DNA of 64,000 nucleotides from contig NIVC01001626.1 in NCBI GenBank assembly GCA_002269645.1, forward strand, positions 124,001 through 188,000. The letters are read 5' to 3'. Source of the DNA: Macrostomum lignano (Eukaryota). Shown here piece by piece: positions 4,495 to 61,700 of the stretch. The translations under genes were made by a program, and so were the position numbers. Numbering within the stretch: the first letter of the stretch is position 1; every line of letters begins with the position of its first letter. A model generated the notes under the pieces. The model was not told the DNA's origin. It saw nothing but the letters and a program-made list of their open reading frames with translations, and did not search any database.

Positions 4495-4583
<89 letters not shown>

Positions 4584-5625: not shown

Positions 5626-5627
5626 AT

Positions 5628-6347: not shown

Positions 6348-6723
6348 ATCGATGCACGTACCCTCTGAAAAATATTTTTACTTTCCAAACCAGCCTTTTT
6401 GCTTTTAACACCATTCATTCAGTATAAAATGATTTTATGCACTCGCAAGCAGTCCCTTCACTGCCGGAGTCGCTCCATTCACTGCATCAATCGATTCCAG
6501 CTCTCCAACCAGAGCCGCTGCATCCATTAGCAAATGCTGGCAAAGTCTCCCCAAGCCAGAATTCATAGAGGCGGGCCATTTGAGAAGTGCTCAGCCTCCA
6601 CCGCCTTCATCCTGGCAGGAGATAGAGGCCGCCTCGCGATTGGACCGCTCTCCATCAACCTCATACTCTGGCCTGATAGCTTGAGCCCCGAGTCTTGGGT
6701 CCCGGGGTTCGAGTCTCTGCACG

Positions 6724-6786: not shown

Positions 6787-7987
6787 TTCCGCTTGGAAGC
6801 CGCACAGACCGGAGCTGCTGCGGAGCCGGCGGCCGCTTCCAGTTGATCGCCAACGGGCCGTTCTGGACCGCCGCAGGAGCCGCCCGCGGAGTGAGCGGCC
6901 TAATTGCATTAGCCAGGCGGGAGCAGCGATGGAGGGGGGGGGGGGAGCGGGCATTCGAATCCCCGAGTCAGCCCCACCTTGGCTGCTATGCTCCAACCGC
7001 CAGTCCGCAGGGAAAGCGCCTGCAGGAGATTTTGCTGTGCCGATCAGAGTTCAAAGTTTTCGTGCGTTATTTTTTTGTTTAAATAAGGCCCGAGTCGTGT
7101 GCAATTTACTTTGGCAGATCTCGCTGAGTCCGGCTTGGAGCCGGCGCAGCGCTCTGCACTTTTAATTCCTTCCAGCTCATTGGGATTAAGCACGCACGAA
7201 GTGCTTGAGCAACTTCACAGGACTGCCCGGTGTGATAGGAATTAATGCATGGATTTTATCAAACATTCAGGGAATTCGGTCTGCATTCGATAAGCCACTG
7301 GTGTTCGGGTTGTTAATCTTATTAACATGTAAGTGATCGGATCCACTGGGGTGATTAAATATATAGTGAAGTGATTCGATCCACTAACTGGAGTTGTGAG
7401 ATTTATTAGATGATGAGTGATTAGATCTACTGGAGTGATAAGATCTACTGGGTTGATTAGATCTACTGGAGTGATTAGATCTACTGGGGGTTGATTAAAT
7501 CCACTGGGTTGATTAGATCTACTGGGTTGATTAGATCTACTGGGTTGATTAGATCTACTGGGTTGATTAGATCTACTGGGTTGATTAGATCTACCGGGTT
7601 GATTAGATCTACTGGGTTTAGATCTACTGGGTGATTGGATCTACTGGGTGTTGATTAGATCTACTGGGTTGATTAGATCTACTGGGTTGATTAGATCTAC
7701 TGGGTTGATTAGATCTACTGGGTTTAGATCTACTGGATGATTGTGTAGGGTTGCGTTTGGTTTGGGCCGTCGGGGTGGGGGCTGCTCTATTGGTATATGT
7801 ACTTGCATCTCGCTTGCTTCTCTGTACATGCCCACCACCCCAGTTGGGTGAGTCACTTTAATCGATCTATCATCGCTGACTATTTAATCGCTCGTAAATT
7901 ATCGTGCATCAAAATATACTTCGTAAACTTACTCTAAATTCTCGGCTCTTACATTGGTGGCAGCGAAAACCCAGTGCAAGTGCACTC

Positions 7988-8806
7988 ATGGCCCAGAACA
8001 CCCTTCTACCGCCAAAGTTCAGTGGAACAGACGGCACTGACGTGAGAAAGTGGCTGCGCATCTTTGAGGAATTCGCCAACGATGCGAAATGGGACGACGC
8101 GACCTCAGCGTCGAAGGTGAAGCTGCTGCTCACGGGAGAAGCCCAACTGGTCGTCTGGGACCTGGCCGAGACAAGACAAAAGAGTTTTAAAAGTATAAAG
8201 GAGGACCTCACAAAGTTTTATGGAGGCGAAGCCGACAGCTTTAAGGCCATGAGCGACTTCTATGCGAGGATACGTGGAGATGCCGAGACACTGCGTGAGC
8301 TCTGCTTTAACCTGAAGCTGCTACACCAGAAAGCCAGACCGGAGGACTCAATTGCTCAACGAGACCGAGATGTGCGCTTCAAGCTTCTGCAGCTGCTCAA
8401 GGCCGACATTCGTGACAACCTGCTTAAGGCAGAGGACGCAGAGACCTGCAGCCTGGAGACTCTGCTGCAGCGGGCGGCTCGGCTGGAGGAGCTGGCTGGG
8501 CGACAGTCGGTGGCGGCAGTCGGAGCCGTCAGCGCTACATCATCGGCAGAACCAAGCGAGGACCGCCTGGACAGACTGGAGAAACGCATGGAGGAGCTCA
8601 TCGCGAGGGTCAGCGTACAGTCGGGTACCGACACTCGGCGTCGCCGTCAACAGCGAGGAAGCGGCTGCTTCAACTGCGGCCAGCTCGGACACCGTGCAGC
8701 GCAATGTCAGCAAGAGAAACAGCCGGGTCCGATCATCTGCCACAAGTGCTCTGGGCGGGGGCACAAGGCCTCTGTCTGCCCATCGAAGGCTCCGGGAAAC
8801 TTTTAA
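7988..8806 (+). CDS. gag: Gag with two CCHC zinc knuckles
   Basis: CFNCGQLGHRAAQC and CHKCSGRGHKASVC; retrotransposon capsid-like N-terminus (PPKFSGTDGTDVRKWL). Confidence 0.93.
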   Translation: MAQNTLLPPKFSGTDGTDVRKWLRIFEEFANDAKWDDATSASKVKLLLTGEAQLVVWDLAETRQKSFKSIKEDLTKFYGGEADSFKAMSDFYARIRGDAETLRELCFNLKLLHQKARPEDSIAQRDRDVRFKLLQLLKADIRDNLLKAEDAETCSLETLLQRAARLEELAGRQSVAAVGAVSATSSAEPSEDRLDRLEKRMEELIARVSVQSGTDTRRRRQQRGSGCFNCGQLGHRAAQCQQEKQPGPIICHKCSGRGHKASVCPSKAPGNF

Positions 8807-11800: not shown

Positions 11801-12447
11801 TGCTGCCCTATGTCGTGTGGGCCTACAACAGCTCTGAGAACAGCTCCACGGGCGAGTCGCCGTTCAAAGTGCTACGCGGCATCGAGCCCAGACTGCCGGT
11901 CGACTTGGCACTCGGTGGGCAGCGCGACCAGCCGCAGGACTGCGCGGACCTGCAGGCGAGAATCAGGCGCGGCTTTCAGGTAGTGCGGGCGCACCTGCAC
12001 ACGGCCCAGAAATCGCAGCACGAGTTCTACAACCTAGGGGCAGAGACTACCGACTTCAAGACCGGTGACCGAGTGATGCTGACGCACCATGCGATGAAGC
12101 GCGGCCAGTGCAAGTCGCTGTCGAACCGGTGGTCCGGCCAGTTCATCGTCCTTAAGAAGGTCAGCCCTGTGAACTACCGGCTGCAGGCTGTGAACGGCAG
12201 GCGCCGCTTGCTGGTCCACCACGACCGCTTGAAGCGCTTTATCGACCGACCGAATCTGAGCGGCAGGCCGCCAGCCAAGCCGGCCACCGAGGACGACTGT
12301 CAGAGCGTCGAGGACGCCGCGGGCCAGCTGGCCGGCCCGGACGCCTGGGAGCCGCTGCGCAACCTGGACGCGGCTGAACCCGGCAACACGGTGCGCCGGT
12401 CGGGCAGGCAGCGCCGGCGGCCGGATTTTTACACGGCGACCTGTTGA
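8704..12447 (+). CDS. pol: Pol polyprotein (protease, RT, RNase H, integrase); protease and RNase H catalytic Asp appear substituted
   Basis: RT YIDD; integrase HHCC (AHDRPSAGHLG..CLVC) and D,D,E (LDIKGP, SDQG, VERFNRTL). Protease reads LLHTGA instead of LDTGA; RNase H reads CNSS instead of xDAS. Confidence 0.95.
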   Translation: MSARETAGSDHLPQVLWAGAQGLCLPIEGSGKLLRVGATGAGPTPTPRSNPVLHAIFIPGEANGKPCRWLLHTGAQTSLISDVALRELDGRCELKPADVRPVSVDGSVLELLGSVSITVRLSHQLRRQMDVLVVRGIRPNFILGVDFVSKAARSQFSIDQGAKTVAFDGEAVPFSDCDSKQDGPLSCCLVPTVIIAKVQGAVVVPPRSVKVVDVTTETKQAHGIFEPSQEFIDRIGVLPGRVFAVSSESGKIPVQVCNLSCSPVTLFSSQSIGTFESAEVIDEDEDVHEWRGPADQFNINPELPEEDSNRLAMLLRAFADLVSVHEFDVGTSSAAQHKIELDDGARPIRQRPRRVPHAFRRQVDEKLEQMRQHGVIEPSTSPWASNLIIVRKKNNDIRVCVDWRALNNLTVKDAHPLPHLHQALDSLAGCSWFFTIDMRQGFLQVEVREEDRPLTAFYTPSGLMQFRKMGFGMCNAPATYQRMMELIMTGLSWEEVIAYIDDLIIFNRDFESHVQPLSKVLHRLRSVKLKLNPGKSFFAYRSVTYLGHQVSESGIAPAAEKVEAIRRMPEPQSEEDVRRIIGMLSFYRRFVPNFSDIAKPLHHLAQKGAGGGFVWTSEHAAVLKKLKDALTQAPVLQLPDFSRPIVISCNSSAVALGAVLSQERDGQELPVAYASRTLSKAERNYSTTDRELLAIVWSLKQFRMYLSNSCKIQVFTDHKPITGLLNAKEPTGRLARWLQLIQEFPLEILYRPGKENIVPDTLSRAAAVQFQIANLPDEQDQDQVLHAVRHAVLQPNFQVPAAVSASVQKLLPCLTLSLSGALLHNGLPVIPQHMRAELLHQAHDRPSAGHLGQRRVLRALRERSWWPDMREDVRDWVRSCLVCQRRKRAPKRARAELVRQPLPAKPWAVMQLDIKGPLPVTESGKRYIICFVDTFSKWVEAAALSQIDAKTVAEALVTCVVLRHGVPEVVHSDQGRQFEAEVFKQTCALLGAEKSRTSPFHPSGNGNVERFNRTLGNMLSAFCSENQASWDALLPYVVWAYNSSENSSTGESPFKVLRGIEPRLPVDLALGGQRDQPQDCADLQARIRRGFQVVRAHLHTAQKSQHEFYNLGAETTDFKTGDRVMLTHHAMKRGQCKSLSNRWSGQFIVLKKVSPVNYRLQAVNGRRRLLVHHDRLKRFIDRPNLSGRPPAKPATEDDCQSVEDAAGQLAGPDAWEPLRNLDAAEPGNTVRRSGRQRRRPDFYTATC
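8794..8842 (+). other. -1 ribosomal frameshift signal joining gag and pol
   Basis: In-phase slippery heptamer G GGA AAC (8794-8800), 6-nt spacer, then a 9-bp stem GGGTTGGTG (8807-15)/CACCAACCC (8834-42). The pol ORF is in the -1 frame. Confidence 0.85.
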
Positions 12448-13732
12448 CGTGCTTTCTTTCTGATCGGGACTTTTTTCGCGTTGCATGAACTTTTTTTTTG
12501 TTTGCTTTTGTTTTATCCCGTTTTTTTATCCCATATTTTTCTTGGGGGAGAGTGATGTAGGGTTGCGTTTGGTTTGGGCCGTCGGGGTGGGGGCTGCTCT
12601 ATTAGTATATGTACTTGCATCTCGCTTTCTTCTCTGTACATGCCCACCACCCCAGTTGGGTGAGTCACTTTAATCGATCTATCATCGCTGACTATTTAAT
12701 CGCTAGTAAATTATCGTGCATCAAAATATACTTCGTAAACTTACTCTAAATTCTCGGCTCTTACAATTGGATCTACTGGGTGTTGATTAGATCTACTGGG
12801 TTGATTAGATCTACTGGGTTGATTAGATCTACTGGGTTTAGATCTACTGGATGATTGGATCTACTGGGTGTTGATTAGATCTACTGGGTTGATTAGATCT
12901 ACTGGGTTTAGATCTACTGGGTGATTGGATCTACTGGGTGTTGATTAGATCTACTGGGTTGATTAGATCTACTGGGTTGATTAGATCTACTGGGTTGATT
13001 AGATCTACTGGGTTGATTAGATCTACTGGGTTGATTAGATCTACTGGGTTGATTAGATCTACTGGGTTGATTAGATCTACTGGGTTGATTAGATCTACTG
13101 GGTTGATTAGATCTACTGGGTTGATTAGATCTACTGGGTTGATTAGATCTACTGGGTTGATTAGATCTACTGGGTTGATTAGATCTACTGGGTTGATTAG
13201 ATCTACTGGGTTTAGATCTACTGGGTGATTGGATCTACTGGGTGTTGATTAGATCTACTGGGTCGATTAGATCTACTGGGTGATTAGATCTACTGGGGGT
13301 TGATTAGATCTACTGGGGGTTGATTAGATCTACTGGGGTTGATTAGACCGACTGTAATTACCTTTGTGGTGGCTGGTTTAACTTCGCAAAAGTTACCCGG
13401 TTCCAGTTCATTTTATTGGGCATTTAATTAATCAACGACAGCAGTTAATTGAGGTGCGAACAGTTTCTGTCCCAGCGCAGCCTTGTGCCCTGGTTTCTGA
13501 CTGTCTCAGCTCTCAGTCTAGTTTATAGCTCAGAGCAAGCGGTTTATGCGGGCTAATTTACAGGCAGAGCGATCGAGCGAGACTTTAGCAAATTTAAGCA
13601 ATAGAAAAAATAATGAGTGCCAGTGTATGCTTATTCCATGCCTTATACATTCAGTGCAAAGCAGTTAAACTCGAAAGCGCTGAAGCTTGTGGCGCTTCGG
13701 CTCCAAACTTCCAGTCAGAAAATTCACCCAGC

Positions 13733-17040: not shown

Positions 17041-17112
17041 TCCCTGATGGTCTAGCGGTTAGGATTCCTGGCTCTCACCCAGGCGGCCCGGGTTCGACTC
17101 CTGGTCAGGGAA
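17041..17112 (+). tRNA. tRNA-Glu(CTC)
   Basis: Complete 72-nt cloverleaf: acceptor TCCCTGA/TCAGGGA, anticodon stem CCTGG/CCAGG with CTC, T-loop TTCGACT. A TTTT terminator lies at 17131-34, and CCA follows genomically at 17113-15. Confidence 0.93.
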
Positions 17113-46515: not shown

Positions 46516-49022
46516 TCAGTGGTGCGACCTTCCGCCTTGCCGCTCGAAGAACATGAAGTCCTGCGTTTGTTGACGAGTGAGAGGAGGGCAAAGTTGCAGG
46601 ATTTCAAGAATGCATTTGGATTGCGGCGCTTTGGTTCACGGGCCCCCCCGCACTCACGATCAAGAAGCAGGCAGCCAGGATGACCGCTTTAATCTTAACG
46701 CTCAAATCCACCGGAAAGGTGATGCCGAAATTGTCGGCATCTGTGAAGTACTCCTGCAGCAGGTTGGTCCACTGCTTCGACACGCGCCCGATCTCCTCGC
46801 CGGAGTCCTTCGACATGAGCTGCGCGCGGCAACACGGAGTAGGCGAATGTGATGAAGTGCCGAGAGTTTAGAGATTTGAGCAGAAAATTTGTGTTTGACT
46901 CACCCTGAACGGAATGTCGTCTCCTGGGCAGTAGCATTTTAGGTAGGTCGGCCCGTCGATGACCAGCACGGTGCAGTCCGACTCGTCCTTGATGTGGTAC
47001 ATAGCCTGGCAGGCTCCGTACACCTGCACCACCTTGCCCACCTTGTTGCCGGGTGGCGACTCCACCGTGACCTCGTCAAAGCAGCACTTGCAGCAGGAAC
47101 ACATCTGGTGGTAGCACATGCACTTGTAGGGCCGGCTCACGTGGATCACCTCGTTGCCGAGGCTGTCTTCGATGGCCAGCTCGAACGGGCGCTGCGGCCC
47201 ACAGCACTGGCGCACGCAAGTGTCGGACGCTGCAGATAGAAAGAGTTATTGGCGCTAGAAATCAACTGGAGTTTGATAGATTAAAATGTTTCTATATAGC
47301 TAGAATGACCCGGGGTTGTTTCATGAGCTCGAAATTTCACATCCTCGAATAGTCTTGCCAGTCACCTACCTCCGCCAGCTCACAACTCAAACGGGTGGAC
47401 AAATGGGAAATTTTCGCTCTAGCCTAAGTTATTACAAGACAGACTTTTCGAATCCTTTGCTAGCAATCTGTAGAATTCTTCAGCCATGCGCATCGATGCC
47501 GATGGCGCAGTATTTTTATATTTCTGCAACCGTTGCATAACTGCCGCTCCGTCTCTCTTGCAGCAAGTCCGTGCCCGGCCAGGCAGGAACTCAGCCAGCG
47601 TCCCAACAGCAAAGCAGCAGCAGGTTCCACCGTTTCCGTCTGTAATTTGAGAATGCGCGCCCGCGGCATCCTGAAGGAGTACCGGGTGGTCGGCCGGCGT
47701 CTGCCGTCCACTGCCGTGCCGCAGCCGCCCCTGTATGAGATGCGCATCTTCGCCACGGACTCCGTGACCGCCAAGTCACGCTTCTGGTACTTCGTGCGCC
47801 ACCTCAAGAAGCTGAAGAAGATGCACGGCGAGGTTCTCCAGTGCAAGATTGTGCCGCCCAAGAAGGCTCTCCGTGTGAAGAACTACGGCGTGTGGCTGCG
47901 CTACAACTCCCGCAGCGGAACGCACAACATGTACAAGGAGTACCGGGACATGGCCCCTGCCGCCGCCATCACCCAGTGCTACCGGGAGATGGGCGCCAGG
48001 CACAGGGCCCGCGCCTCCTCCATCCACATTCTGAAGATCAAGGAGATCGCGTCCAAGGACTGCAAGCGCCCCTGCGTGACGCAGTTCCACGACAGCAAGC
48101 TGAAGTTCCCGCTGCCGCACCGCGTCCACCGCAGGCTGCACGCGCCAAGGTTCACCACCGTGCGGCCCAAGACCACCTTCTGAGAGCAGGCGAGAAGGCC
48201 TGGCTGGCAGTGCGCTGTGACAGTTGCGGATTCGCTGACAGAACTGAGAGAAGTCAAATCAGAAATAAACTCGGACAGGGCGGAATCGAAAGAGTGGCGT
48301 CAAATTTTTGATTGCTGACTTTTTTCAACTGCATTGTTATTTGTTCGATTGTGGAATCAAATTGTCCGTGGCTGGCTGGCTTTTGACTTTTATTTCTTAT
48401 TTGGTTAGCAATTTTTTTGTTTTTCTAATTAGTTTATGATTTAGTTTTAATATAGTGGATGGATATGAAATGTTTACTCTTACGGTTGGAAATATCGACT
48501 AAAATCAGGCTGAAACTCGCGGCAAGTATGCAGGGGAAACTAGAGGACAAGCGGAAACGATGGCTGCACTCACATTCCTTGGCAAAGTAGACCTTCTGGC
48601 CCATGGAGTTGTACACAACGTATTTGTTCTGCATCTCGAAACCGGACACCACTGAAATGAAGGGGCGAGAAATGCCTCTGTCAGTTCCAAAAAGCTTAGC
48701 AGGTTTCTTTGTATAAAAAGCCAAATTAATTGAGCCGGAGCTGGACTTTCTTATCCTGAGTTCGCTCACTTTCAAAGAACTCTTTCTTCTGCTTGATCAG
48801 CACCTGGTCCAGAGTGCTCAGGTACTCCAGTCCGGGCGGGCAGCTGCGCGAGTTTGATGACGCGCCGGGCTTCTCCATCCACGGCGCCTCGTGCCTGCCG
48901 CCGTGGTGGTGGTGATGGTGGTGGTGCTGGTGCTGCTGGTCCACTGGCTGCATGGCCATGGCTGTGGACTGCTGCTGCCCGTTGGGGTAGGCAGGTGCCG
49001 GCTGCACCTTGTTGCTCTCCAT
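46516..49022 (-). CDS. PLSCR: Phospholipid scramblase (PLSCR family); exons 49022-48770, 48651-48574, 47229-46904, 46819-46658, 46560-46516; 287 aa
   Basis: [92 protein letters not shown]. Exon lengths sum to 864 nt with in-phase GT-AG junctions. Confidence 0.95.
47653..48183 (+). CDS. RPL18A: 60S ribosomal protein L18a (eL20), intronless, nested antisense in scramblase intron 2
   Basis: [70 protein letters not shown]. Confidence 0.97.
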
Positions 49023-51516
49023 GGACACCGCTGTGTCTGCGGAATTGACGGGAAGAAAGGAAAGGAAGCTTTTTAGCTGCAGTTTCTCCTCGGGTTTTTG
49101 CGCCAATTCACCGCCACCGCGATGGCGCGACTCAAAGGGTTGGTCTTGTGCGGCAACAAAGGCCAGGTCACTAATTGGTGCGCGTCTGACATGTTTGTTG
49201 CTCGCAGCTCAAATGACTCAGAGGGAAGGCAAATGTTTTTTTGCTAAAGTCATTAATTGGCAAGCGCGGTGATTTGTTTGGTAAACGGCAGTGACTGCTC
49301 TGTTGTGATGGGCAAGGCCACTTGGCAGTTGCATGCGTCTAGAAATCCGCGAGCGAGTGAAAACACATGCAAGTTGTGCATCCGCTTGGAGCAGACAGAA
49401 ACTACGTGCAGCTCTCGGAATTCGGGAATTACGGACCTGTAGGCTGTAGCTACAGTTCTTTATTGAATTAAGGTTTTCAACTCTGCAAGCACAGCCACTG
49501 GCTGCACAACGATTCCCAGACGGTGTTTTGTAACGGCAAACAGTGCGGCAAGTGCCCCAGCAAATACAAAGAACAAGCTGTACTTTTTCTCTGCAGTCAA
49601 CATATCACATATGGAAATGTATTATATAGCAAAACAGACAAGGGGACAATTGACTTGAGTGATGCCCGTAGTGCACAACAACAGCCATTGCTTTACAGCA
49701 GCAGTTGAATGCTTTCAGTGAGATAAGCGAATCCACTCACCGTAATAAGTTGCGTTGTCCATCTCTGGTGCCGCTTCCAGGGCTCGTTTCGGTCTTTTTA
49801 ATAAACGAGATGAAAGAGCGAAAAGCGATAGGCAAAATGGGCGCATGAGGCGATGTGCGAGCTTGCACAGAGGGGAATGCGGTTGAGACTGGTTTCTTCA
49901 TCGAGCTGAGTGCACGCGACACTGGCGTGCAAGGTCAGTTGAGAAAATAGTTTTTGAGGTGATCCGGTATAAATGGGTGTGCTAGATTGCTATCTTAGTT
50001 TCAAGGTCCAAGCTCGATTCCATCGTTCGCTTGCGAAGACCAGCCCCCCCCCCCAAACAAGCAGTATTAGAGTGGGCATGTCCGACTTTGCCACACAGTC
50101 AGGACACGCGGGTACACCGTGTCATCAATCGAATTCTGCGAGTCTTTCGCAACATTTTTAGAAGGGTTAATCGGGGTCAAATCTACGTATTAAACAGAGC
50201 TTATTAATATCTAAGCATCTGCAGACACAGTGGAAGCCTATTAAAAAAGTACTGCTCACCAACCTCACCTGTCAGTCGGACTGCTCCCGTGACCCGGTTC
50301 AATTACTGTCTGTCAGCTGGTGCTGCTGCTGACGGACGGATCTGCTTTGTTCTCCGCTTTTGCCTGAAGCTGCACTCTGAGCCCCAGCGTGCGAGCAGCT
50401 GTCTATATAGAGCACCTGCCGTGTGGCAGCCGTGCCGCTGCAGCTCCCACTGGCTACAAGCGCGGGGAGCTCAGGGTAGGAGAAGCGGGGGCGAGGGCTG
50501 CAAAGACAAATACACCTTGTTTCCATGGCAACGCCATACAGCTCAGAGGGAAGGCATATAGACGGAAGGAACAGCCTGCATGTCTCGCCAGTTTTGCCCA
50601 CTCAGTGCGGAATGGCTGCGAAGTCCCTAATCTGCAACTGTGCCTATCCAGCACTTGTATAGTCGGTAACCGCTTTTAATAACGAAATTCTGTCGTCTCA
50701 AGTTGCCACAATTCCTGATTCAGGACAAAGAGGAACTTGCGTATTATAAATATTCCATCAAACTTATATAGCTCCAGCTTTCGGGTATCTTACTTTTTTA
50801 CGAGCGTATAAATATTCGATTTCCTTTACTTTGAAGCGAACATTGAAATTCGAACCTCCTGTCTACGACGATCGACTCACCCACAGGCTCGCAGTTCACT
50901 GTGATGAAGAAACATCGAGCTTCGGATTCAGTAAATTGTTTTTTATAGCTAGGAAACTGTCTGGAAAGCATCAATGTGCCTTGCAACCTACTGATTACTC
51001 ATAGTAGCATCGCAAATTTTCTTCAACCAAAATATTTAGATCTTTTTAGGAACAAAACCGACATTATACTGTCGGAGCTTAAGTTTAAATAATTTTCTAA
51101 GAGACCGACAAAACAGTCACAAAAACTTAACATCATCTTTCCATTGCGAAGGATGCGGCAGCGTGGCTGATCGGAGTATTGCAAGAAGGCAACTTGTGGG
51201 ACTTGACCCGCCTAATCAGGTCTAATCTGCCTAACCTGCTCACTTTTCTTGTAATAGGGGTGGGTTTTCCAATGATTCTGCAATCAAATTGCTCACACTA
51301 AAGGAATGACGTTAGCTTCCTTCTAGCGACCTCTTGGAGAAGGCATCTCATGTACATACCTACTGTAAGCATTTGACAGTGACGCCAAAAGTGACGCTCA
51401 CCAAGAGAGACAGTGACGCTTATACCGAGAGACAATGACGCTTATCAAGAGACAGTGACACTTACCAAAAGACAGTGACACTTACCAAGAGACAGTGACA
51501 CTTACCAAGAAACAGT

Positions 51517-52483
51517 TGTTGTGACCTGTGTCACAGTGCTCCCCTGGTGCAAGTGCACTTTGATAGTTGTTGACTTTGGTAGTTGATTATTGTTACCCCC
51601 CCCCCCCGGCTCAAGCCAGTCTGGAGCTATGAGCCCTTTGGCTGAGCCTCTGCTCTCTTTCTCTCTCTCTCTCGCCTTGGCTGTTTAGCCCTTTGGCTAG
51701 CCGTGCTGATTGGCTGGGCCTCTGCTCTCTCTCCCTCTCCCTGGCCGTGCGCGCTTCCACCCTCCCCTCGCCGCAGCCAATCAGCTGTCAATCAGCTCCA
51801 TTGTTTAAGCCCTTTCTCCCCCCCCCTTGTTTGCGCCCCTGCCCCTTTTTACTCGTTATTTAAGGCGACGCTCAGACCCCGCCCCTTTTCTCACCGTGCC
51901 TGCGCCCATTTGCGCCCACCGCGATAAATAAACGAACGTGACCAGCGATCAACCGTAGAGACGGTCTCTTACTGCGAAGACTCAATTTATTGCAATCGAT
52001 CGGCCTTCCCGTGTATGAGTGCTATAATCGACCCGGCCCGGTAAGCTGTCGAGACAATTGCCTGTGTTCCTCGGGGTCGCTCTCCTGATCTCTCTCTCTC
52101 TCACTCTCTCTTTTCCTTGACTCACCAGGCTGTCGAGTGGCCGACCGCCCGCAGCCCTCTCTCTCTTCCTTGACTCACCAGGCTGTCGAGTGGCCGCCCG
52201 CCCACAGCCCTCTCTCTTTTCCTTGACTCACCAGGCTGTCGAGTGGCCGACCGCCCGCAGCCCTCTCTCTCTTCCTTGACTCACCAGGCTGTCGAGTGGC
52301 CGCCCGCCCACAGCCGCCCCTCCCCTCTCTCTCGACTTCTCAACCTTGACCTCCCCCCGAAGTGTCCGTACGCCTCGGGGTCGCCGATCGAGCTCGTAAG
52401 CCCTGGGCAGTCTAGTACCCGAACCCCGACACCGCTACCCGTCGCCCAACCCGGCCGTGCCAGCGAGGAAGGGGGATACAACA
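51517..52483 (+). mobile_element. Solo LTR (967 bp) containing a spliced-leader-like sequence
   Basis: TGTTGT...ACAACA termini and 4-bp TSD CAGT (51513-16, 52484-87) within the host repeat. CCAAT-type boxes at ~51705 (inverted) and ~51777; TAAATAAA at 51925-32; four 53-bp internal repeats at 52116-52320. No ORF or PBS seen. Confidence 0.85.
51951..51994 (+). other. Flatworm spliced-leader (SL) exon-like sequence lacking the terminal ATG
   Basis: AACCGTAGAGACGGTCTCTTACTGCGAAGACTCAATTTATTGCA. Positions 51962-94 equal the first 33 nt of the Macrostomum lignano SL as I recall it (CGGTCTCTTACTGCGAAGACTCAATTTATTGCATG). The AACCGT start and ACCGT/ACGGT hairpin mirror the Schistosoma SL. Confidence 0.8.
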
Positions 52484-54332
52484 CAGTGACACGTACCAAG
52501 AGAGACAGTGACGCTCACCAAGAGACAGTGACGCTTATACCGAGAGACAATGATGCTTATCAAGAGACAGTGACGCTTACCAAGAGACAGTGACGCTCAC
52601 CAAGAGAGACAGTGACGCTCATAAGAGACAGTGACACTCACCAAGAGAGACAGTGACGTTCACAAGAGAGACAGTGACGCTCACAAGAGACAGTGACACT
52701 CACCAAGAGACAGTGACGCTTACCAACAGACAGTGACGCTCATCAAGAGACACTGACACTTACCAAGACAGACAGTGACGCTCATCAAGAGGCAGTGACA
52801 CTTACCAAGAGAGACAGTGACGCTCAACAAGAGACAGTGACGCTTATCAAGAGACAGTGACGCTTACCAAGAGACAGTGACGCTTACCAAGAGACAGTGA
52901 CGCTTACCGAGAGACAGTGACGCTTACCAAGAGACAGTGACGCTTACCAAGAGACAGTGACGCTTACCGAGAGACAGTGACGCTTACCAAGAGACAGTGA
53001 CGCTTACCAAGAGACAGTGACGCTTACCAAGAGACAGTGACGCTTACCAAGAGACAGTGACAGTTACCAAGAGACAGTGACGCTCACCAAGAGAGACAGT
53101 GACGCTCACCAGAGAGACAGTGACGCTCACAAGAGAGACAGTGGCGCTCACAAGAGAGACAGTGACGCTCACAAGAGACATTGACACTCACCAAAAGACT
53201 GACGCTTACCAAGAGACAGTGACGCTTACCAAGAGACAGTGACGCTTACCAACAGACAGTGACGCTTACCAAGAGACAGTGACGCTTACCAAGAGGCAGT
53301 GACACTTACCAAGAGAGACAGTGACGCTCATCAAGAGACGGTGACGCTTATCAAGAGAGACAGTGACGCTTATCAAGAGACGGTGACGCTTATCAAGAGA
53401 GACAGTGACGCTTATCAAGAGACAGTGACGCTTACCAAGTGACAGTGACGCTTACTAAGAAACTGACGTTGAACTAAGAGACGCTGTCGCTCACCAAGAG
53501 ACTGACACTCAACTAGACTGCCCCTACATGTAAGTGACGCACCTTCGTAGTAATTCATACGCACGACACAGATATGCACCTCTTCATTTCAGTTTGGATA
53601 CATTCAGTAACAGTGTAAGTTTAACCGACACGCTCAGCTTTCTTCGACAATGGGATGAAGCCATACCTTCTGATGACGGCTGTTTTCGCAGCCATCCGAG
53701 TGGAGGCTGTTCTCTGCACCCGCAAAAAGCTTTCACGGAAACAAGCAGCATTTCTAACAGAAAAGACGCATCTTTTGCCGATGCAAAAAACATAAAACCT
53801 GCCCCTTAAAAACCTGGTAGCATCACTTATTTCTACCTGCCCCAAGCTCGACAGCCCGCGGCTAATGGACGCTTCTGTGCCAGGACAGTTGCGGTATTCA
53901 AGACACCATTATGACGATCTTTCTCTCGAGCTGACAACAAAAAGCTGCCCGAAAAAGCAGGCCTGCAGAACCCTCCCCACGAAGGTGACTTCGAGCCATC
54001 TCTGCTCCTTCGATTGAGCAAACAAAAAGTGGCCTCCATCGGAATTGACGCTGATCCCGTTACAGGAAGCCCCGCCGGGGCTCGCAGTGTCAGCAAATCG
54101 ATGCGATTCTTGCGCACCGGAGGACAATCAGCTTGAGCAGTCCCATTTTCCTCAGCAACTGTTTGCCTGACGACTGCCATTAGGAGAAGCTTCGATTCAA
54201 AAAACTTCTCTCCTAGAAGTTTCTGTTGGCGGGCCTTTCAAGCAAATCCTGCGCTGACTGGCTGGGCGGCAGCCGATTTAAAGGCCTGCTGACTCGCCCC
54301 GACTCGCCGCTCCGCCCGCCCGCACTGCAGCC

Positions 54333-55840
54333 ATGAGTCCCGGCCGCGAGCTCCTCCTGTGCTGCGCCGTCATCCTGCAGCTGCTGCAGGGCTGCCCCGG
54401 CCTCTCCACCAGCCGGCAGTTCAAAGCGACCGCCCTGTGCCCGCGGCTCTCCGCGCTGCCCGCCCGAGCCGAGAAGTCGAAAATTCGCTGCGGCGCTGCG
54501 TGCAGCAGCAGGCCGGACTGCGACCTGTTCCACTTCAACCGGACAGCCGGTCTCTGTTACCATGGCAACTCCACGTGCGAGGGACTGGCGCTGTGGAGCG
54601 ACGGACCCTGCGACTCCTTCAGAGCAGGTAGCGTCCGTGAGCTGGAATTCTATTGCTGAATTTCCTTTGTTCCTTCCGAATGCTTTGCAAATCCCCCCTG
54701 ACCACCGCAGCCACTCCAGGGCGATCCTCTGCGGACCCGATCGTCGGCAAGCTCGGCCTCAAGCTGCTCTACAGGTTCGCCAGCCACGGCCTCGAGAACG
54801 TCGCCGACCCGTGCCAGCACCGGCTGAGGAGCGGCAACGCCACGGTGGTGAACGGTTCTGGTGCGCACTTTGTGCAGAGCCCGGACTCCTTCCTGATGGC
54901 GGAGACGCCCGGCTTCGAGACGGTGGTCAACAAGGGCAACAAGTTCTCCTTCTTCGTCCGGGCCAAGCACCCGCTGGACATCGAGTGAGTCGCCTCTGAG
55001 GCAATGAAAGTTCGAGCAGAGCTCGGGCTCTTGCTGAGTCATTGTGCACCGCAGTGAGACCTTTGTGCGAATGGGGCTGAGAGTCCCAGATCCTGTGCAC
55101 CGCAGTGAGACCTTTGTGCGAATGGGGCTGAGAGTCCCAGATCCTGTGCACCGCAGTGAGACCTTTGTGCGAATGGGGCTGAGAGTTCCAGATCCTGTGC
55201 ACCGCAGTGAGACCTTTGTGCGAATGGGGCTGAGAGTCCCAGATCCTGTGCACCGCAGTGAGACCTTTGTGCGAATGGGGCTGAGAGTTCCAGATCCTGT
55301 GCACCGCAGTGAGACCTTTGTGCGAATGGGGCTGAGAGTCCCAGATCCTGTGCACCGCAGTGAGACCTTTGTGCGAATGGGGCTGAGAGTCCCAAACCCT
55401 CTCCAAACTGCAGCGGCACCTACGCAGCATTCCGGCACTGCACCGGAACATCCTGGACATCCGTGGCTCACGACCTGTACACTCACAAAGGAGAAACCTG
55501 GCACCAGGTGTTCTGGCCCGCTGACGGAAAATCCTACCTCTACAATTCCGGCACCGTGTACAGCAAGAGCAGCTCAGCCGCCCTGGTCTCCACCGGGGTC
55601 TCCTACGACACGGACCGGGCTGTCAGCTTCTTCTTCAACGGGAGCAGCCGCGCTGCCAGTCTGGATGACACAAAATCGAAATCCGGCCTCAGCACTGCGA
55701 ATTTCCAATGCCTGCAGCTGGGAGGCTTCCCTGTCAGTGGATTCTCCATCCAGGGCAGCATCTCCTGCTTCGGTCTGAGCACTCGAGTGCTCAACCAGTC
55801 CGAGTTCGCGCTGCTGGACAGCTGGTGCCAGCGGGTTTGA
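54333..55840 (+). CDS. Secreted protein with N-terminal PAN/apple-like domain and C-terminal LamG/ConA-like beta domain; exons 54333-54627, 54711-54984, 55414-55840; 331 aa
   Basis: Signal peptide; CGAACSSRPDCDLFHFN....LC is a PAN-like motif. Three exons join in phase (996 nt). The C-terminal domain call rests only on pattern (LKLLYRF, FSFFVR, LQLGG, ISCFGL..RVLNQSE). Confidence 0.75.
55042..55395. repeat. 51-bp minisatellite (~7 copies) filling intron 2 of the PAN-domain gene
   Basis: Unit gtgcaccgcagtgagacctttgtgcgaatggggctgagagtcccagatcct. Confidence 0.95.
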
Positions 55841-56974
55841 AGCGGCGGCCCCATGGAAGCTAGCAGTACAGTTGAACTGAGAATCTGATCGATCGCACCT
55901 GAAGATTGAATAACAGCCCAAATCCTTCATTCAAGAGGTCTATCTGAGAGACTTGACAGACTGATCCCTGACGCAAGTCCCGGTCTGAGACAGACGCGAT
56001 TAAACAATGTCAGCTGGTCGCGAATCTCGCAGGCCATTTTTCCTCGAGCATCCCAAAAATTCAAATGGTAACCGCGACTCTGAATTTCAGCTTCTTTCAC
56101 TGGCGCTGCTCATCTAAATAACTCAGGTTCTGTAGATGTGTGTAGACTGAGTTCGAGCAGTTCAGCTGTGTACTGGTCTGCAGTTTAGCTGTGTACTGGT
56201 CTGCAGTTGAGGTGTGTCCTGGTCTGTAGTTTAGCTGTATATCAAGATGGTAAGTAGTTTAGCTGTGTACTGGTCTGTAGTTTAGCTGTGTACTGGTCTG
56301 CAGTCTGCCCCTGGCCATTATTAGCCTAGTTTTACCCTCGGATACTAGAATAACTATTAATTATTCTAACTATTCTAGCATCTGTGGCTTTACCCAGTCA
56401 AATAACAAAGCAGACCAAACAAGACCAAAAGCAGAGCGGGTTGCTTGGCTGCAACGCCAAGAGGGCATTTAAAACCTGCAGCGGCTGCGTCCTCCAGCGA
56501 CGCCCGCCCCGATCAGTTCCGGTGTTATTCCAGTTGAAACAAATATTTAGCATACAGCAGGCAACGGGGTGCTGTGGGAGATGCTCAGCACAAACCACTA
56601 AACTGGCAAGCGAGAAACAAACAGGTGTTCAATTCGAACTTCAGCCCCAACCAATCCGTGAGAATGCTTGAATTCGTGGCAATCAAAAGGGCTGGGAGAA
56701 CTTTAAAAAACCACCTGCCAGCGATGAACAGCGGACTGGGCGAATTGCGATACCCTGGGGCGAACTCGAATAATGAGCCAATGTGAAAGCCATGCGGTTG
56801 GTTAGCGGCAAAGCCATGCAGAATAGAGACAGAAAATCCTTCTGTAGGAAATCCTTTGAAGCTCTGGCGACCCGGGATGAGGCTGCTTGCATTGATGGAG
56901 GGCTGTAGGGGGAAGCAGGGTGAGGAGGTGGAGAGGAAGCCTGGGGGAGAAAATCAAAGGCTGAGTGAAAGAAG

Positions 56975-57242
56975 GAGAGTGAGAGAACGAGAGGGAGGGT
57001 GAGAGAACGAGAGGGAGGGTGAGAGAACGAGAGGGAGGGTGAGAGAACGAGAGGGAGGGTGAGAGAACGAGAGGGAGGGTGAGAGAACGAGAGGGAGGGT
57101 GAGAGAACGAGAGGGAGGGTGAGAGAACGAGGGAGGGTGAGAGAACGAGAGTGAGAGTGAGAGAACGAGAGGGAGGGTGAGAGAACGAGAGGGAGGGTGA
57201 GAGAACGAGAGGGAGGGTGAGAGAACGAGAGGGAGGGTGAGG
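56975..57242. repeat. 20-bp purine-rich minisatellite (gagggagggtgagagaacga)
   Basis: Direct reading. Confidence 0.92.
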
Positions 57243-57819
57243 AGGATGAGATGCAGAAAAGGAGAGGGGAGGAAGAGAGGGAGAGACTGACAAACTGGGA
57301 GAGATTGAGAGGTAGGGTGAGAGATGGGGTGAGACGGGGTGTGAGGGTGAAGATAATGAGACACCTGTGAGATGGCGAGAGTGCAGAGAGCTGAAGGGAA
57401 GAGATGAGCAACCGGTGAGATTCAAGCGGTCGCAAGGAAATGCAGGCAGACTGCGAAGCTCCCTCGGGGCTGAAGGTCGCGAGCTCGAATTCGAAGCGAG
57501 GGGGGGGGCGATTTGAAACAAAATAAAAGCGAAAATCTCTCACGGAGCGGAATAAAATTTATTAATCAAACATGAATAGGCAGATCAGTGATTGCTGGTG
57601 AATAATTAATAGCATAGTCCAAGGCTATACTAAATTAAACAAACTGGAATTTGCAGGAAGCTGGCAAGGCTGCGTAACAGAGAAACAAGAAGCTCTCCTA
57701 ATAACAGACATTACAGGCATTACAGGCATTACAGGGAATATGCGATTGCCAAGTGCACCAGAATTCAACTCTGAATTGGAATTTAAAGTAATGCAAACTG
57801 CGACAGTGATCTGCTAGTG

Positions 57820-58585
57820 CTGGGATTCGGGATCTGTGCGATGGGATTAGGGATCTGTGCGATGGGATTTGGGATCTGTGCGATGGGATTCGGGATCTGT
57901 GCGATGGGATTAGGGATCTGTGCGATGGGATTTGGGATCTGTGCGATGGGATTTGGGATCTGTGTGATGGGATTTGGGATCTGTGCGATGGGATTTGGGA
58001 TCTGTGCGATGGGATTTGGGATCTGTGTGAGGGGTTTTGGGATCTGTGTGATGGGATTTGGGATCTGTGTGATGGGATTTGGGATATGTGCGATGGGATT
58101 TGGGATCTGTGTGATAGGACTTGGGATCCGTGCGATGGGATTAGGGATCTGTGTGATGGGACTTGGGATCCGTGCGATGGGATTTGTGATCTGTGTGATT
58201 GGATTTAGGATCTGTGCGATGGGATTTGGGATCTGTGTGATTGGATTTGGGATCTGTGCGATGGGATTTGGGATCTGTGTGATTGGATTTGGGATCTGTG
58301 CGATGGGACTTGGGATCTGTGCGATGGGATTTGGGATCTGTGTGATGGGATTTGGGATCTGTGCGATGGGATTTGGCATCTGTGTGATGGGATTTGGGAT
58401 CTGTGCGATGGGATTTGGCATCTGTGCGATGGGATTTGGCATCTGTGTGATGGGATTTGGGATCTGTGCGATGGGACTTGGGATCTGTGTGAGGGGTTTT
58501 GGGATCTGTGCGATGGGATTTTGGATCTGTGCGTTATTTTTCGGGATCTGTGCGATGGGATTTGGGATCCGTGCGATGAGATTAG
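57820..58585. repeat. 21-bp minisatellite (gggatttgggatctgtgcgat)
   Basis: Direct reading; source of the (MGFGICA)n and (QIPNPIA)n ORFs. Confidence 0.95.
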
Positions 58586-58758
58586 GGATGGAAGGAAGAG
58601 ATTACCCAGGCCCAGGGTAATTGCTTTGTCACTGTGCAGCTTGAATTGGGAACAAACAGTGAAACAGATATTCATTAAAAAGGAGAAAAGATTCTAACAA
58701 TGCAGGCAAAGCCATCAGAATTGAGAATCCAGGCGGAGTCCGCGAGCAGAAAGACGCG

Positions 58759-61700
58759 TCAGAAAGAGTTGTGCTTCCGGTGGCCGTAGAACTGCTGCCA
58801 GCCGGCGCAGCTCGAGTTTCGCCGCTGCCGCCGCTTCCTCTCCTCCATGTAGCGGGAGATCCAGCAGCGGGAGGTCACGCTGGACTTTTGTTGCCCGCCG
58901 CCTCCCCGCCTGGCGCCTCCGCGACCTGCGGGCGCTTCGATTTTGGTGGTGGCGGCGGCTGCGGCGGCGGGGTCCTCGCCATCGCTGACGTAGTCCTCTG
59001 GGAACTCGGTGCACGGCGGCAGCTCCAGGACCCGGCCGGTGCGCTTGTCCCGGAGGCAGCGGCAGGGCCGGCGGCCACGGAATCGGCACTCGTAGCGAAT
59101 GTCCTCCTGGGTCACCGGCTCCAGCGGGTAGCCGAAGCGAACCTGAGTTGGCGGGTCAGGGAGGCAGTAGGTCAGCTGGATGGTGGGTCAGTGAGTCAGC
59201 TTGATGGTGGGGTTAGTCGATCATCTGGTTGGTGGGTCAGTGGGTCAGCTGGTTGGTGGGTCAGTTCGTCAGCTGGATGGTGGGTCAGCTGGATGGTGGG
59301 TCAGTGGGTCAGCTGGATGGTGGGTCAGCTGGATGGTAGGTCAGTAGGTCAGCTGGTTTGTAGGCCAGTGGGTCAGCTAGATGGTGGGGTTAGTGGGTCA
59401 GCTGGATGGTGGGTCAGTGTGTCAGCTGGATGGTGGGTCAGCTGGATGGTGGGTCAGTGGGTCAGCTGGATGTTGGGTCAGTGGGTCAGCCGGATGGTGG
59501 GTCAGTGGGTCAGCTGGATGGTGGGTCAGTGGGTTAGCTGGATGGTGGGATTAGTGGGTCAGCATGATGGTGGGTCAGTGGGTCAGCTGGATGTTGGGTC
59601 AGTGGGTCAGCCGGATGGTGGGTCAGTGGGTCAGCTGGATGGTGGGTCAGTGGGTCAGCTGGATGGTGGGTCAGTGGGTCAACTGGATGGTGGGATTAGT
59701 GGGTCAGCTGGATGGTGGGTCAGTGGGTCAGCTGGATGTTGGGTCAGTGGGTCAGCCGGATGGTGGGTCAGTGGGTCAGCTGGATGGTGGGTCAGTGGGT
59801 CAGCTGGATGGTGGGATTAGTGGGTCAGCTGGATGGTGGGTCAGTGGGTCAGCTGGATGTTGGGTCAGTGGGTCAGCCGGATGGTGGGTCAGTGGGTCAG
59901 CTGGATGGTGGGTCAGTGGGTCAGCTGGATGGTGGGATTAGTGGGTCAGCTGGATGGTGGGATTAGTGGGTCAGCCGGATGGTGGGTCAGTGGGTCAGCT
60001 GGATGTTGGGTCAGTGGGTCAGCCGGATGGTGGGTCAGTGGGTCAGCTGGATGGTGGGTCAGTGGGTCAGCTGGATGGTGGGATTAGTGGGTCAGCTGGA
60101 TGGTGGGTCAGTGGGTCAGCTGGATGTTGGGTCAGTGGGTCAGCCGGATGGTGGGTCAGTGGGTCAGCTGGATGGTGGGTCAGTGGGTCAGCTGGATGGT
60201 GGGATTAGTGGGTCAGCTGGATGGTGGGATTAGTGGGTCAGCTGGATGGTGGGTCAGTGGGTCAGCTAGATGTTTGGTCAGTGGGTCAGATGGATGGTGG
60301 GTCAGCTGAATGGTGGGTCAGCTGAATGGTGGGTCAGCTGGATGGTGGGTCAGCTGGATGTTGGGTCAGCTGGATGGTGGGTCAGTGGGTCAGCTAGATG
60401 TTTGGTCAGTGGGTCAGCTGAATGGTGGGTCAGTGGGTCAGATGGATGGTGGGTCAGCTGAATGGTGGGTCAGCTGGATGTTGGATCAGCTGGTTGTTGG
60501 ATCAGTGAGTGATCAGCTGGCTCAAACGACTTGTGGGTCAGCTGAAAAGGTCAGAGCAAACAAAGCCGAGCTCTAACCTGCAGGAAGTAGGGATAGGGCA
60601 CTCGGTTCTGCGAGTGCAGCCACCACAGGGTGAAGGCGTCAACGCCGGACTCCTTGGCCAGCTGCTCCCTGCAGTGGTAGCATCGGGCCGTCAGGTAGTT
60701 GGGCAGGTCAGACCTGCTCAGGTAGTCGCACCTGCGGCAGGCGATAGCGAATAGGGAGTTTCTATGATTCTGACCGCTTGTGCATTGATGACTTGAGAAT
60801 TTAGGATGGCAAAGATGTCAGGAGATGAAATGTAATAATGACAGTTATGGCATACTGACAACACCACAGGAATCGCAGACAAGATGCCTGATTACATGAC
60901 AAGAACCTCAGATTACATGACACGAATCTTGGAACGCATGTCAAGAATCTCAGATTACATGACAAGAATCTCAGATTAAATGACAAGAATGTCAGATTAT
61001 ATGACAAGAATGTCACATTACATGACAAGAATGTCACATTACATGACAAGAATGTCGGATTACATGACAAGAATGTCAGATTATATGACAAGAATGTCAC
61101 ATTACATGACAAGAATGTCACATTACATGACAAGAATGTCACAATACATGACAGGAACCTCAGATTACATGACAAAAATGTCACAATACATGACAAGAAC
61201 CTCAGATTACACTACACGGCAAGAATTTCCGGTCCCACTTCCGCAGCAACCAAGCCCCTCACTTGTCATGCCACCGGCACTCCTGTAGGACCGGCAGGTG
61301 GGGCCGCAGCCCCAGAACAGCTCGCTAGGCGGGGCCTCCACCGGCACCAGCACGCAGTCGACATCGTCGTGGTTCGGCTGCCTCGGCCCGGCGCAGATCC
61401 TCTCGTAGGTGCAGTCCCGCAGCCGCTGCCGCTCCTCCGCTTCCTGCCTCTGCTTGGCCAGCGCGTCCAGCTTCCTGCTGAGCAGGTCGCAGTCCAGCTG
61501 GTGCGAGAGCAGCGGATTCTGCGGCTGGCCTGGAGCTGCGGCGACGGTGGCAGGGGCGACGGTCGGGGCGGCAGCGGGGGCGGCAGCGGCGGTGGGAGGA
61601 GCGGCGGCAGTGGGCGCGGCGGACACGGGCGGCGAGCCCCGGTTGTTGCCGCCGCCAGAGCTGCCAGCGCCGCCGCCATTGCCGCCGCCGCCGGCCGGGT

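What the first reader, a model, noticed from the sequence alone, without database searches (positions are those of the whole stretch)
51517..52483. LTR with a built-in spliced leader: candidate SL-mimicking retrotransposon
Seen: a TSD-bounded 967-bp solo LTR contains AACCGTAGAGACGGTCTCTTACTGCGAAGACTCAATTTATTGCA (51951-94). Its first base lies 26 nt after the start of TAAATAAA (51925-32), with CCAAT boxes further upstream and a donor-like CG|GTAAGC at 52040/41. It is not an SL RNA gene: the ATG|GT exon end is replaced by ATCG and no Sm site follows. Established: flatworms add a capped SL exon beginning AACC and ending AUG to many mRNAs; 33 nt here match the M. lignano SL as I recall it, which needs verification. 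Inference: the LTR promoter initiates at the AACC, so element RNA starts with an SL mimic made in cis. This could borrow SL-linked translation or stability, or pass as host mRNA, and dropping the AUG would avoid an upstream ORF. Alternative: the SL was captured passively by reverse transcription of a trans-spliced element RNA and fixed in the R region. Solo copies could also give neighbouring sequence false SL-bearing 5' ends. I know of no description of this arrangement.
Basis: partly seen in the sequence, partly recalled or inferred. Interest (0 to 1): 0.9.

Follow-up and report, generated by a model that had tools for sequence, protein, structure and literature searches.

The report
Solo LTR carrying captured spliced-leader copy
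A recently inserted retrotransposon LTR in the flatworm Macrostomum lignano holds a near-perfect copy of the host's spliced-leader exon where its transcripts should start or end; this is most likely a fossil of a trans-spliced element RNA, and no function has been shown for it.

Summary
Window 51517-52483 is a 967-bp insertion with TGTTGT...ACAACA ends and a 4-bp duplication (CAGT). It sits in a 20-bp minisatellite. A syntenic M. lignano scaffold (NIVC01000639.1) has the exact empty site, so the insertion is real and young.

Bases 51953-51994 match the published 44-nt M. lignano spliced leader (SL) at 41 of 42 positions. Homology stops at the edges of the mature exon. Compared with a genuine SL RNA gene recovered from a metagenome, the flanks match only at chance level. 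There is no donor after the exon, no Sm site and no SL-RNA fold. The block therefore came from processed RNA, not from the gene.

It begins 18 nt after the LTR's only AATAAA and 26 nt after the start of TAAATAAA. By analogy with four other Macrostomum-type LTRs, that is the transcription-start and poly(A) zone.

The best reading is passive capture of the SL from a trans-spliced element RNA during reverse transcription. Cis-made SL-headed RNA is a plausible but unshown consequence. Adaptive "SL mimicry" has no support.

No second copy could be found with the tools available, so conservation is untested. A 2025 paper already reports SL fragments in flatworm LTR and LINE elements. Interest is moderate.

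The parts
51390..51516 (.). Host 20-bp minisatellite, left of the insertion
   Evidence: Tandem Repeats Finder. Continuous with the right part in the empty-site locus L006.
51513..51516 (.). Target-site duplication CAGT, left copy
   Evidence: L006 has a single CAGT at this site.
51517..52483 (+). 967-bp insertion, read as a solo LTR of an unidentified LTR retrotransposon family
   Evidence: TGTTGT...ACAACA termini, 4-bp duplication and a precise empty site. No internal region or second LTR is present in the window.
51517..51522 (+). 5' terminal inverted repeat TGTTGT (its partner ACAACA is at 52478-52483)
   Evidence: Direct reading.
51709..51781 (+). U3-like region holding ATTGG (51709-13) and CCAAT (51777-81)
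   Evidence: Motif scan. These are sequence matches only.
51857..51863 (+). TATTTAA, a second TATA-like motif and an alternative core promoter
   Evidence: If used, the RNA would start near 51885-51890 and the SL block would lie inside the RNA.
51925..51932 (+). AT-rich island TAAATAAA, TATA-like, containing the LTR's only AATAAA (51927-32)
   Evidence: Comparable single islands occur in the LTRs of L014, L015, L016 and L017.
51953..51994 (+). Processed copy of the host spliced-leader exon: 41/42 identity, final TG absent
   Evidence: Flank identity to the genuine SL RNA gene is 20-27%, which is chance level.
52015..52044 (+). The only ATG on the + strand after the SL block, opening a 9-codon ORF whose stop overlaps the donor-like site
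52041..52046 (+). Donor-like GTAAGC (a second GTAAG lies at 52396-52400)
   Evidence: About 0.5 GTAAG per 500 nt is expected by chance, so this is weak evidence.
52104..52315 (+). Four copies of a 53-bp tandem repeat in the U5-like part
52484..52487 (.). Target-site duplication CAGT, right copy
52484..53502 (.). Host 20-bp minisatellite, right of the insertion

Best explanation
The 967 bp are a young solo LTR of a Macrostomum lignano LTR retrotransposon. At the boundary between its promoter part (U3) and its transcribed part (R/U5) it carries a processed copy of the host spliced-leader exon.

Most likely origin (inferred): the genomic RNA of an ancestor was SL trans-spliced at an acceptor upstream of the primer-binding site. 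Minus-strand strong-stop cDNA then ended with the complement of the SL and had lost its R homology. It jumped to the poly(A) end of the RNA. The regenerated LTRs became U3, short R, SL, then the rest of U5. From then on the SL was copied as ordinary LTR sequence.

This model places the block just after the poly(A) site and in the start-site zone, as observed.

Consequence (inferred): RNAs made from this LTR family, solo copies included, would carry an SL-like sequence encoded in cis. It would lie at the 5' end or a few nucleotides inside it. Such RNAs would look trans-spliced in SL-based annotation. No selective function of the block is shown.
For: Shown:
- Integrase-type insertion with a 4-bp duplication and an exact empty site in NIVC01000639.1. 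It is also absent from NIVC01000386.1. The flanks are 98.5-99% identical, so the insertion is recent.
- SL identity is 41/42 and is confined to the mature exon. Identity to a genuine SL RNA gene falls to 20-27% on both sides.
- There is no donor, Sm site or SL-RNA fold. The fold z-score is +1.1, against -3.6 for the genuine gene.
- Four metatranscriptome contigs show what real trans-spliced ends look like...TTGCATG followed by unrelated mRNA.
- The block starts 18 nt after the LTR's only AATAAA. None of 13 poly(A)-signal hexamer variants lies downstream of the block.
- Four related LTRs (L014-L017) each have one AT-rich island combining TATA-like and AATAAA-like motifs. R must therefore be very short in these families.

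From papers:
- LTR-element RNAs can be SL trans-spliced, as in Cer1 (PMC3315495).
- Calvelo et al. 2025 found 597 SL-bearing loci in LTR and LINE elements and proposed the same origin (PMC12582326).
Against: - Only one copy was seen, so inheritance of the block within a family is assumed, not shown.
- No full-length two-LTR relative was recovered, so "solo LTR" rests on the ends, the duplication and the empty site alone.
- A trans-spliced origin predicts ...GCATG followed by exon sequence. The LTR reads ...GCAATCG, so one extra event is needed, for example loss of TG from ...GCATG|ATCG...
- The first nucleotide before CCGT is A, where the genuine SL has G.
- The non-homologous first-strand jump is a rare event and is inferred from the layout only.
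- The start site and poly(A) site are predictions from motifs.
Confidence: 0.55

Rival explanations
1. Adaptive SL mimicry. The LTR promoter starts transcription exactly at the block. The element RNA therefore carries an SL made in cis. Selection keeps it because it improves translation or stability, or makes the RNA pass as host mRNA. The AUG was removed to avoid an upstream ORF.
For: - The block starts 26 nt after the first T of TAAATAAA.
- Comparable single AT-rich islands are the only promoter candidates in four related LTRs.
- The block is almost intact (41/42) in a young insertion.
- The one substitution falls in a predicted loop.
Against: - There are no expression data and no second copy, so neither the start site nor conservation is known.
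- A promoter-driven RNA is expected to carry an m7G cap, not the trimethylguanosine cap of true SLs (PMC8629364). The known partner of the SL would therefore be missing (inference).
- An ATG with a short ORF remains at 52015, so upstream AUGs are not avoided.
- A near-intact block is equally expected from a recent passive capture.
- The position at the start site is also predicted by the capture model.
Confidence: 0.12
2. The SL block lies inside the transcript. Transcription starts near 51885-51890, driven by TATTTAA (51857-63). R runs to a poly(A) site about 18 nt after AATAAA. The SL block is then the first part of U5, roughly 65 nt from the cap. It would still be a capture fossil, but element RNA would not begin with it.
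For: - TATTTAA lies at 51857-63.
- AATAAA at 51927-32 is the only poly(A) signal in the LTR and sits just before the block.
- This layout gives an R of ordinary length and is exactly what a jump to the poly(A) end would produce (inference).
Against: - The related LTRs L014-L017 have only one AT-rich island, which must serve as the promoter. By analogy TAAATAAA would be the promoter here too.
- No start-site data exist.
Confidence: 0.2
3. Capture without trans-splicing of the element. Reverse transcriptase reached the 5' end of an ordinary element RNA, switched to a free SL exon, an SL RNA fragment or another SL-bearing mRNA, and then switched back to the element.
For: - The copy stops 2 nt short of the exon end and lacks the first G. 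That fits template switches at ragged ends as well as it fits trans-splicing plus a deletion.
Against: - It needs two non-homologous switches instead of one.
- No intron sequence is present, so an unspliced SL RNA was not the template.
Confidence: 0.1
4. Artefact or chance: an assembly chimera with cDNA, or a chance resemblance to the SL.
For: - The insertion is absent from the two syntenic scaffolds of assembly GCA_002269645.1 that I could fetch.
Against: - 41/42 identity, with 0 of 100 shuffles matching.
- Clean TG...CA ends, a 4-bp duplication and an exact empty site are marks of integration, not of mis-assembly.
Confidence: 0.03

Closest known systems
SL-bearing loci inside LTR and LINE elements of parasitic flatworms (Calvelo et al. 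2025, PMC12582326)
   Same: Leader sequence without any other SL RNA feature, embedded in retroelements. [quoted passage not shown]
   Different: Those loci were only counted (597) and discarded as a filter step. They were described as partial leaders, and their position within the LTR was not analysed. Here a free-living macrostomid carries a near-complete leader, placed at the predicted start-site and poly(A) zone of a demonstrably recent insertion.
Relict spliced leaders of dinoflagellate retrogenes (Slamovits and Keeling 2008, cited in PMC12582326; PMC12014239)
   Same: A DNA-encoded SL remnant produced by reverse transcription of trans-spliced RNA and its integration.
   Different: Those are at the 5' ends of retroposed host genes. 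They are not inside the terminal repeat of an autonomous-type retroelement, where the remnant would be re-copied at every cycle.
Cer1, a Ty3-type element of C. elegans (PMC3315495)
   Same: It shows that an LTR-element RNA can receive the host SL at an acceptor inside the element.
   Different: In Cer1 only the 2.4-kb spliced RNA is SL1 trans-spliced and the 8-kb genomic RNA is not. No SL is encoded in the Cer1 LTR.
ta-TRIM solo LTRs of Echinococcus (PMC4558846)
   Same: Solo LTRs that start transcripts. A donor in the LTR can splice in cis to a host trans-splice acceptor and compete with the SL. The GTAAGC at 52041 could in principle act in the same way.
   Different: No SL sequence lies in those LTRs. 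Transcription from the present LTR is not shown.
The mis-assigned 'SL RNA' of the first M. lignano genome paper (discussed in PMC8629364)
   Same: A genomic locus in the same species holds the SL sequence but is not an SL RNA gene. It maps to the 5' end of gene Mlig013257.g1.
   Different: I could not obtain that sequence, so any relation to this LTR is unknown.
SL-gene-specific retrotransposons (SLACS, CZAR, CRE of trypanosomatids; NeSL-1 of C. elegans; from my own knowledge)
   Same: An association between retroelements and spliced-leader sequence.
   Different: Those are non-LTR elements that insert into SL RNA genes. Here the target is a minisatellite and the SL lies inside the element.

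Membership tests
Solo LTR of an LTR retrotransposon | TG...CA termini forming a short inverted repeat | tested here: met
   TGTTGT at 51517-22 and ACAACA at 52478-83.
Solo LTR of an LTR retrotransposon | 4-6 bp target-site duplication, with the unoccupied site found elsewhere | tested here: met
   CAGT lies on both sides. L006 has the empty site with one CAGT and differs by 1 SNP.
Solo LTR of an LTR retrotransposon | The same sequence bounds full-length elements carrying PBS, gag-pol and PPT | tested here: inconclusive
   There is no other copy in the window or in 196 kb of fetched M. lignano scaffolds. LTR ORFs are absent from the protein collections. No tool here searches the whole flatworm genome by DNA.
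Solo LTR of an LTR retrotransposon | Promoter and poly(A) signal inside the repeat | not testable with these tools
   The motifs TAAATAAA/AATAAA, TATTTAA and CCAAT are present. Their use needs RNA data.
SL RNA gene | SL exon followed directly by a GT splice donor | tested here: not met
   The exon copy ends ...GCA and is followed by ATCGATCGG. The genuine gene has ...GCATG|GTAAGA.
SL RNA gene | Sm-like site between hairpins, and the three-hairpin fold | tested here: not met
   The genuine gene (L004) folds at -33.4 kcal/mol with z = -3.6. The LTR stretch gives z = +1.1 and has no Sm-like run.
SL RNA gene | Homology to SL RNA gene flanks (promoter, intron) | tested here: not met
   Identity over 10-40 nt on either side is 20-27%, against 41/42 within the exon.
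Retroposed (processed) SL relic | Homology limited to the mature leader and located in a retro-copied sequence | tested here: met
Retroposed (processed) SL relic | Complete 3' end of the leader (...ATG) joined to the acceptor exon | tested here: not met
   The last 2 nt (TG) are absent. Four true trans-spliced contigs all keep ...GCATG. A secondary 2-nt loss would reconcile this (inference).
SL-gene-specific retrotransposon (SLACS/NeSL type) | Insertion inside an SL RNA gene | tested here: not met
   The target is a 20-bp minisatellite.

The most novel reading that the evidence does not exclude
This would be an active LTR retrotransposon family of M. lignano whose promoter starts exactly at a genome-encoded spliced leader. 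Its RNAs would then imitate trans-spliced host mRNAs without trans-splicing. Selection would keep the block, for translation, stability or escape from surveillance. Its solo LTRs would scatter promoter-plus-leader-plus-donor cassettes that give neighbouring DNA false SL-bearing 5' ends, and that could be raw material for new SL-type donors.
Probability: 0.12. Interest if true: 0.8.

Novelty: new member of a known kind. Interest (0 to 1): 0.45.

Why it matters
1. Practical. M. lignano gene models are defined with SL-containing reads. An LTR that encodes the leader can produce reads that look trans-spliced, and so false "trans-spliced genes" and false SL RNA candidates. One such mis-assignment is already on record for this species (PMC8629364).

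2. Mechanistic. The layout is U3, AATAAA, 18 nt, then a full leader. It is a readable scar of how a trans-spliced retroelement RNA can survive reverse transcription. It also shows that trans-splicing reaches retroelement genomic RNAs in flatworms.

3. If the block proved to be conserved and to sit at the RNA 5' end, it would be a case of a mobile element imitating a host mRNA mark. That has not been described. My evidence does not reach this point.

Tried and rejected
**Searches for other copies, all negative**
- blastn of the LTR against the window found only itself and low-complexity matches.
- Exact look-up of nine LTR ORFs found nothing.
- A word-based protein search with the 74-aa U3 ORF found nothing.
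- A full HMMER search of 1.84 billion representatives with the 103-aa U5 ORF gave two unrelated repeat proteins.
- blastn against 196 kb of M. lignano scaffolds and against five environmental Ty3 contigs found nothing.
- The viral-contig scan with the SL core gave 0 hits.
- A full-text search for the LTR-specific junction strings found 0 papers.

**Other dead ends**
- Exact look-ups of the window's pol and of the 176-aa RPL18A failed because the annotated models differ.
- Rfam is uninformative. It does not detect even the genuine Macrostomum SL RNA gene.
- The 2015 M. lignano genome paper that holds the mis-assigned SL RNA is not in the library.
- The supplement of the 2025 M. lignano LTR paper is not held.
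- The 3' ends of the metatranscriptome contigs carry no poly(A) tails, so they do not establish poly(A)-signal usage.

**Readings rejected**
- SL RNA gene or pseudogene: the flanks and the fold argue against it.
- DNA transposon: only 6-bp inverted ends with TG/CA.
- LINE-mediated retrocopy: no poly(A) tail, and a 4-bp duplication.

I stopped when I noticed. The generic signal motifs (poly(A) hexamers, TATA, CCAAT, GTAAG) also come from general knowledge.

Full report
**1. The observation**

The element runs from 51517 to 52483, which is 967 bp. It begins TGTTGT and ends ACAACA, and CAGT flanks it on both sides (51513-16 and 52484-87). It interrupts a 20-bp minisatellite that runs from 51390 to 53502.

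The quoted 44-mer is at 51951-51994. It occurs once in the window and in none of 100 shuffles. TAAATAAA is at 51925-32, CCAAT at 51777, ATTGG at 51709 and G|GTAAGC at 52040/41. The element has no second copy in the window.

**2. The match to the real spliced leader**

I took the leader from papers, not from memory. PMC8629364 gives a 35-nt M. lignano SL, and 51962-51994 equals its first 33 nt. PMC5173321 gives a 44-nt consensus, and 51953-51994 equals 41 of its first 42 nt. The one change is A to G at position 6. The last two bases (TG of the ATG) are missing.

The leader is identical in M. cliftonense and M. hystrix. The M. cliftonense assembly shows G before CCGT.

**3. A genuine SL RNA gene for comparison**

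A metagenome scan with the leader core returned five contigs. Four are metatranscriptome contigs that start with the leader, end it with ...TTGCATG and continue into four unrelated mRNAs. That is what true trans-spliced ends look like.

The fifth, L004, is an animal genomic contig. It carries a Na/K-ATPase beta gene and a textbook SL RNA gene:
- an exon 44/44 identical to the published leader;
- the donor GTAAGA directly after ATG;
- a U-rich Sm-like run between hairpins;
- a fold of -33.4 kcal/mol with z = -3.6.

The same-length stretch of the LTR has no such fold (z = +1.1). Anchored on the exon, LTR-to-gene identity is 41/42 inside the exon. It is 20-27% over 10-40 nt on either side. The LTR therefore holds the processed exon only. 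It has no promoter, no intron and no Sm site, so the source was RNA and not the gene. Rfam cannot help, because it misses even the genuine gene.

**4. Organism, insertion and age**

The RPL18A ORF at 47653-48183 is 99% identical to M. lignano PAA79357.1. Through this protein cluster I fetched the syntenic regions of assembly GCA_002269645.1.

Both near-identical copies lack the 967 bp. These are L006 (NIVC01000639.1) and L010 (NIVC01000386.1). In L006 the site is exactly empty. The window's flanks, joined with one CAGT, reproduce L006 with a single SNP. This proves the insertion and the 4-bp duplication.

The unique flanks are 98.5-99% identical between the copies. The insertion is therefore younger than that small divergence.

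TG...CA ends with a 6-bp inverted repeat and a 4-bp duplication are the marks of an integrase. The simplest reading is a solo LTR left by LTR-LTR recombination. That last step is inferred, because I found no full-length relative.

**5. Where the block sits in the LTR**

The LTR is GC-rich. None of 13 common variants lies downstream of the block. A second TATA-like motif, TATTTAA, is at 51857-63. After the block the + strand has one ATG (52015), which opens a 9-codon ORF.

For comparison I read the LTRs of four other Ty3-type elements:
- two from M. lignano scaffolds (L014, L015);
- two from environmental contigs with the same primer-binding site (L016, L017).

These LTRs are about 180-200 bp. 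Each has a single AT-rich island, which in L014-L016 combines TATA-like and AATAAA-like motifs and in L017 is a weaker variant. The island ends about 60-70 nt before the LTR end. In such LTRs the start site and the poly(A) site must nearly coincide, and R must be very short.

By analogy, TAAATAAA is the core island of the present LTR. The leader copy then begins in the start-site and poly(A) zone. It is 26 nt after the island's first T and 18 nt after AATAAA.

**6. Most likely mechanism**

Shown: a processed leader lies at this boundary of a young LTR.

Inferred: an ancestor's genomic RNA was trans-spliced upstream of its primer-binding site. Cer1 of C. elegans shows that LTR-element RNAs can receive an SL. 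Strong-stop cDNA then ended with the leader's complement and had no R to pair with. It jumped to the poly(A) end of the RNA. Both regenerated LTRs became U3, R, leader, then the remaining U5.

This single aberrant step leaves R intact and fits several features:
- the distance from AATAAA;
- the complete 5' part of the leader;
- the absence of intron sequence;
- possibly the two A's at 51951-52, where the genuine leader has G.

The missing TG needs one further event, for example loss of TG from ...GCATG|ATCG...

Calvelo et al. 2025 proposed the same kind of origin for 597 leader-bearing loci in LTR and LINE elements of parasitic flatworms. They gave no anatomy.

**7. What it would do**

If the island is the promoter, RNAs from this family would carry the leader in cis at, or a few nucleotides inside, their 5' ends. 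So would read-through RNAs from solo copies. The present copy points into the minisatellite and away from the scramblase and RPL18A genes, so no host gene is obviously affected.

Such RNAs would be scored as trans-spliced by pipelines that trim the leader from reads (PMC8629364).

If TATTTAA is the promoter instead, the block lies about 65 nt inside the RNA.

Nothing here shows a benefit to the element:
- I have no second copy, so no conservation test.
- A promoter-made RNA would be expected to lack the trimethylguanosine cap of true leaders.
- An upstream ATG remains, which weakens the "AUG removed on purpose" argument.

**8. Limits**

No tool here searches a flatworm genome by DNA. I sampled 196 kb of M. 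lignano scaffolds through annotated proteins and found no further copy. That only excludes a very abundant family, roughly fewer than 10^4 copies per genome by my own estimate. Protein-level routes with LTR ORFs were empty.

**9. Novelty and verdict**

The class is known: a leader fossil inside a retroelement. It is known from flatworms (PMC12582326) and, for retrogenes, from dinoflagellates. This is a well-resolved new member in a free-living flatworm. Its placement is informative and it is demonstrably recent.

It has no support yet.

Noticed in passing
window 7334-13354: A Ty3/Mdg4 element with open gag (7904-8806, zinc knuckle) and pol (8704-12447, PR-RT-RNaseH-IN) frames. It is 98% identical to M. 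lignano PAA51672.1. Its LTR regions carry 18-bp tandem arrays of unequal length. It is unrelated to the SL-bearing LTR.
   Followed up: partly
L010 10994-14908 (corresponds to window 48558): An insertion of about 3.9 kb with 37-bp terminal inverted repeats and internal tandem repeats. It is present in NIVC01000386.1 and absent from the window and from L006. It is a polymorphic DNA-transposon-like insertion in the scramblase gene region.
   Followed up: partly
L018 1274-1288: Fifteen bases identical to the 3' end of the spliced leader, including ATG, are encoded in the genome 70 nt before the start codon of an EF-hand gene. The context is AT-rich. This may be a leader relic or chance.
   Followed up: no
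L004 585-725: A genuine Macrostomum-type SL RNA gene lies in an environmental contig, next to a Na/K-ATPase beta gene. A 9-nt partial duplicate of the exon start lies 14 nt upstream of the exon.
   Followed up: partly
L014 9088-9268 and 13868-14048; L015 8352-8548 and 12755-12951; L016 about 3730-3930; L017 ends: Short (about 180-200 bp) Ty3-type LTRs with a single AT-rich island, which in L014-L016 combines TATA-like and AATAAA-like motifs. They share a primer-binding site beginning TGGTGGCAGCG. R must be very short in these families.
   Followed up: partly
window 3979-6400, 55043-55394 and 56000-60000: A dense set of minisatellites: 44-bp, 43-bp, 20-bp and 51-bp units. A stretch at 56-60 kb has strong GC skew (0.34-0.44).
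   Followed up: no
window 17041-17112: A tRNA gene (Rfam RF00005, 57 bits).
   Followed up: no
window 51517-51545: The LTR's 5' end holds a small palindrome, GTGAC-CTGT-GTCAC, directly after the terminal TGTT.
   Followed up: no
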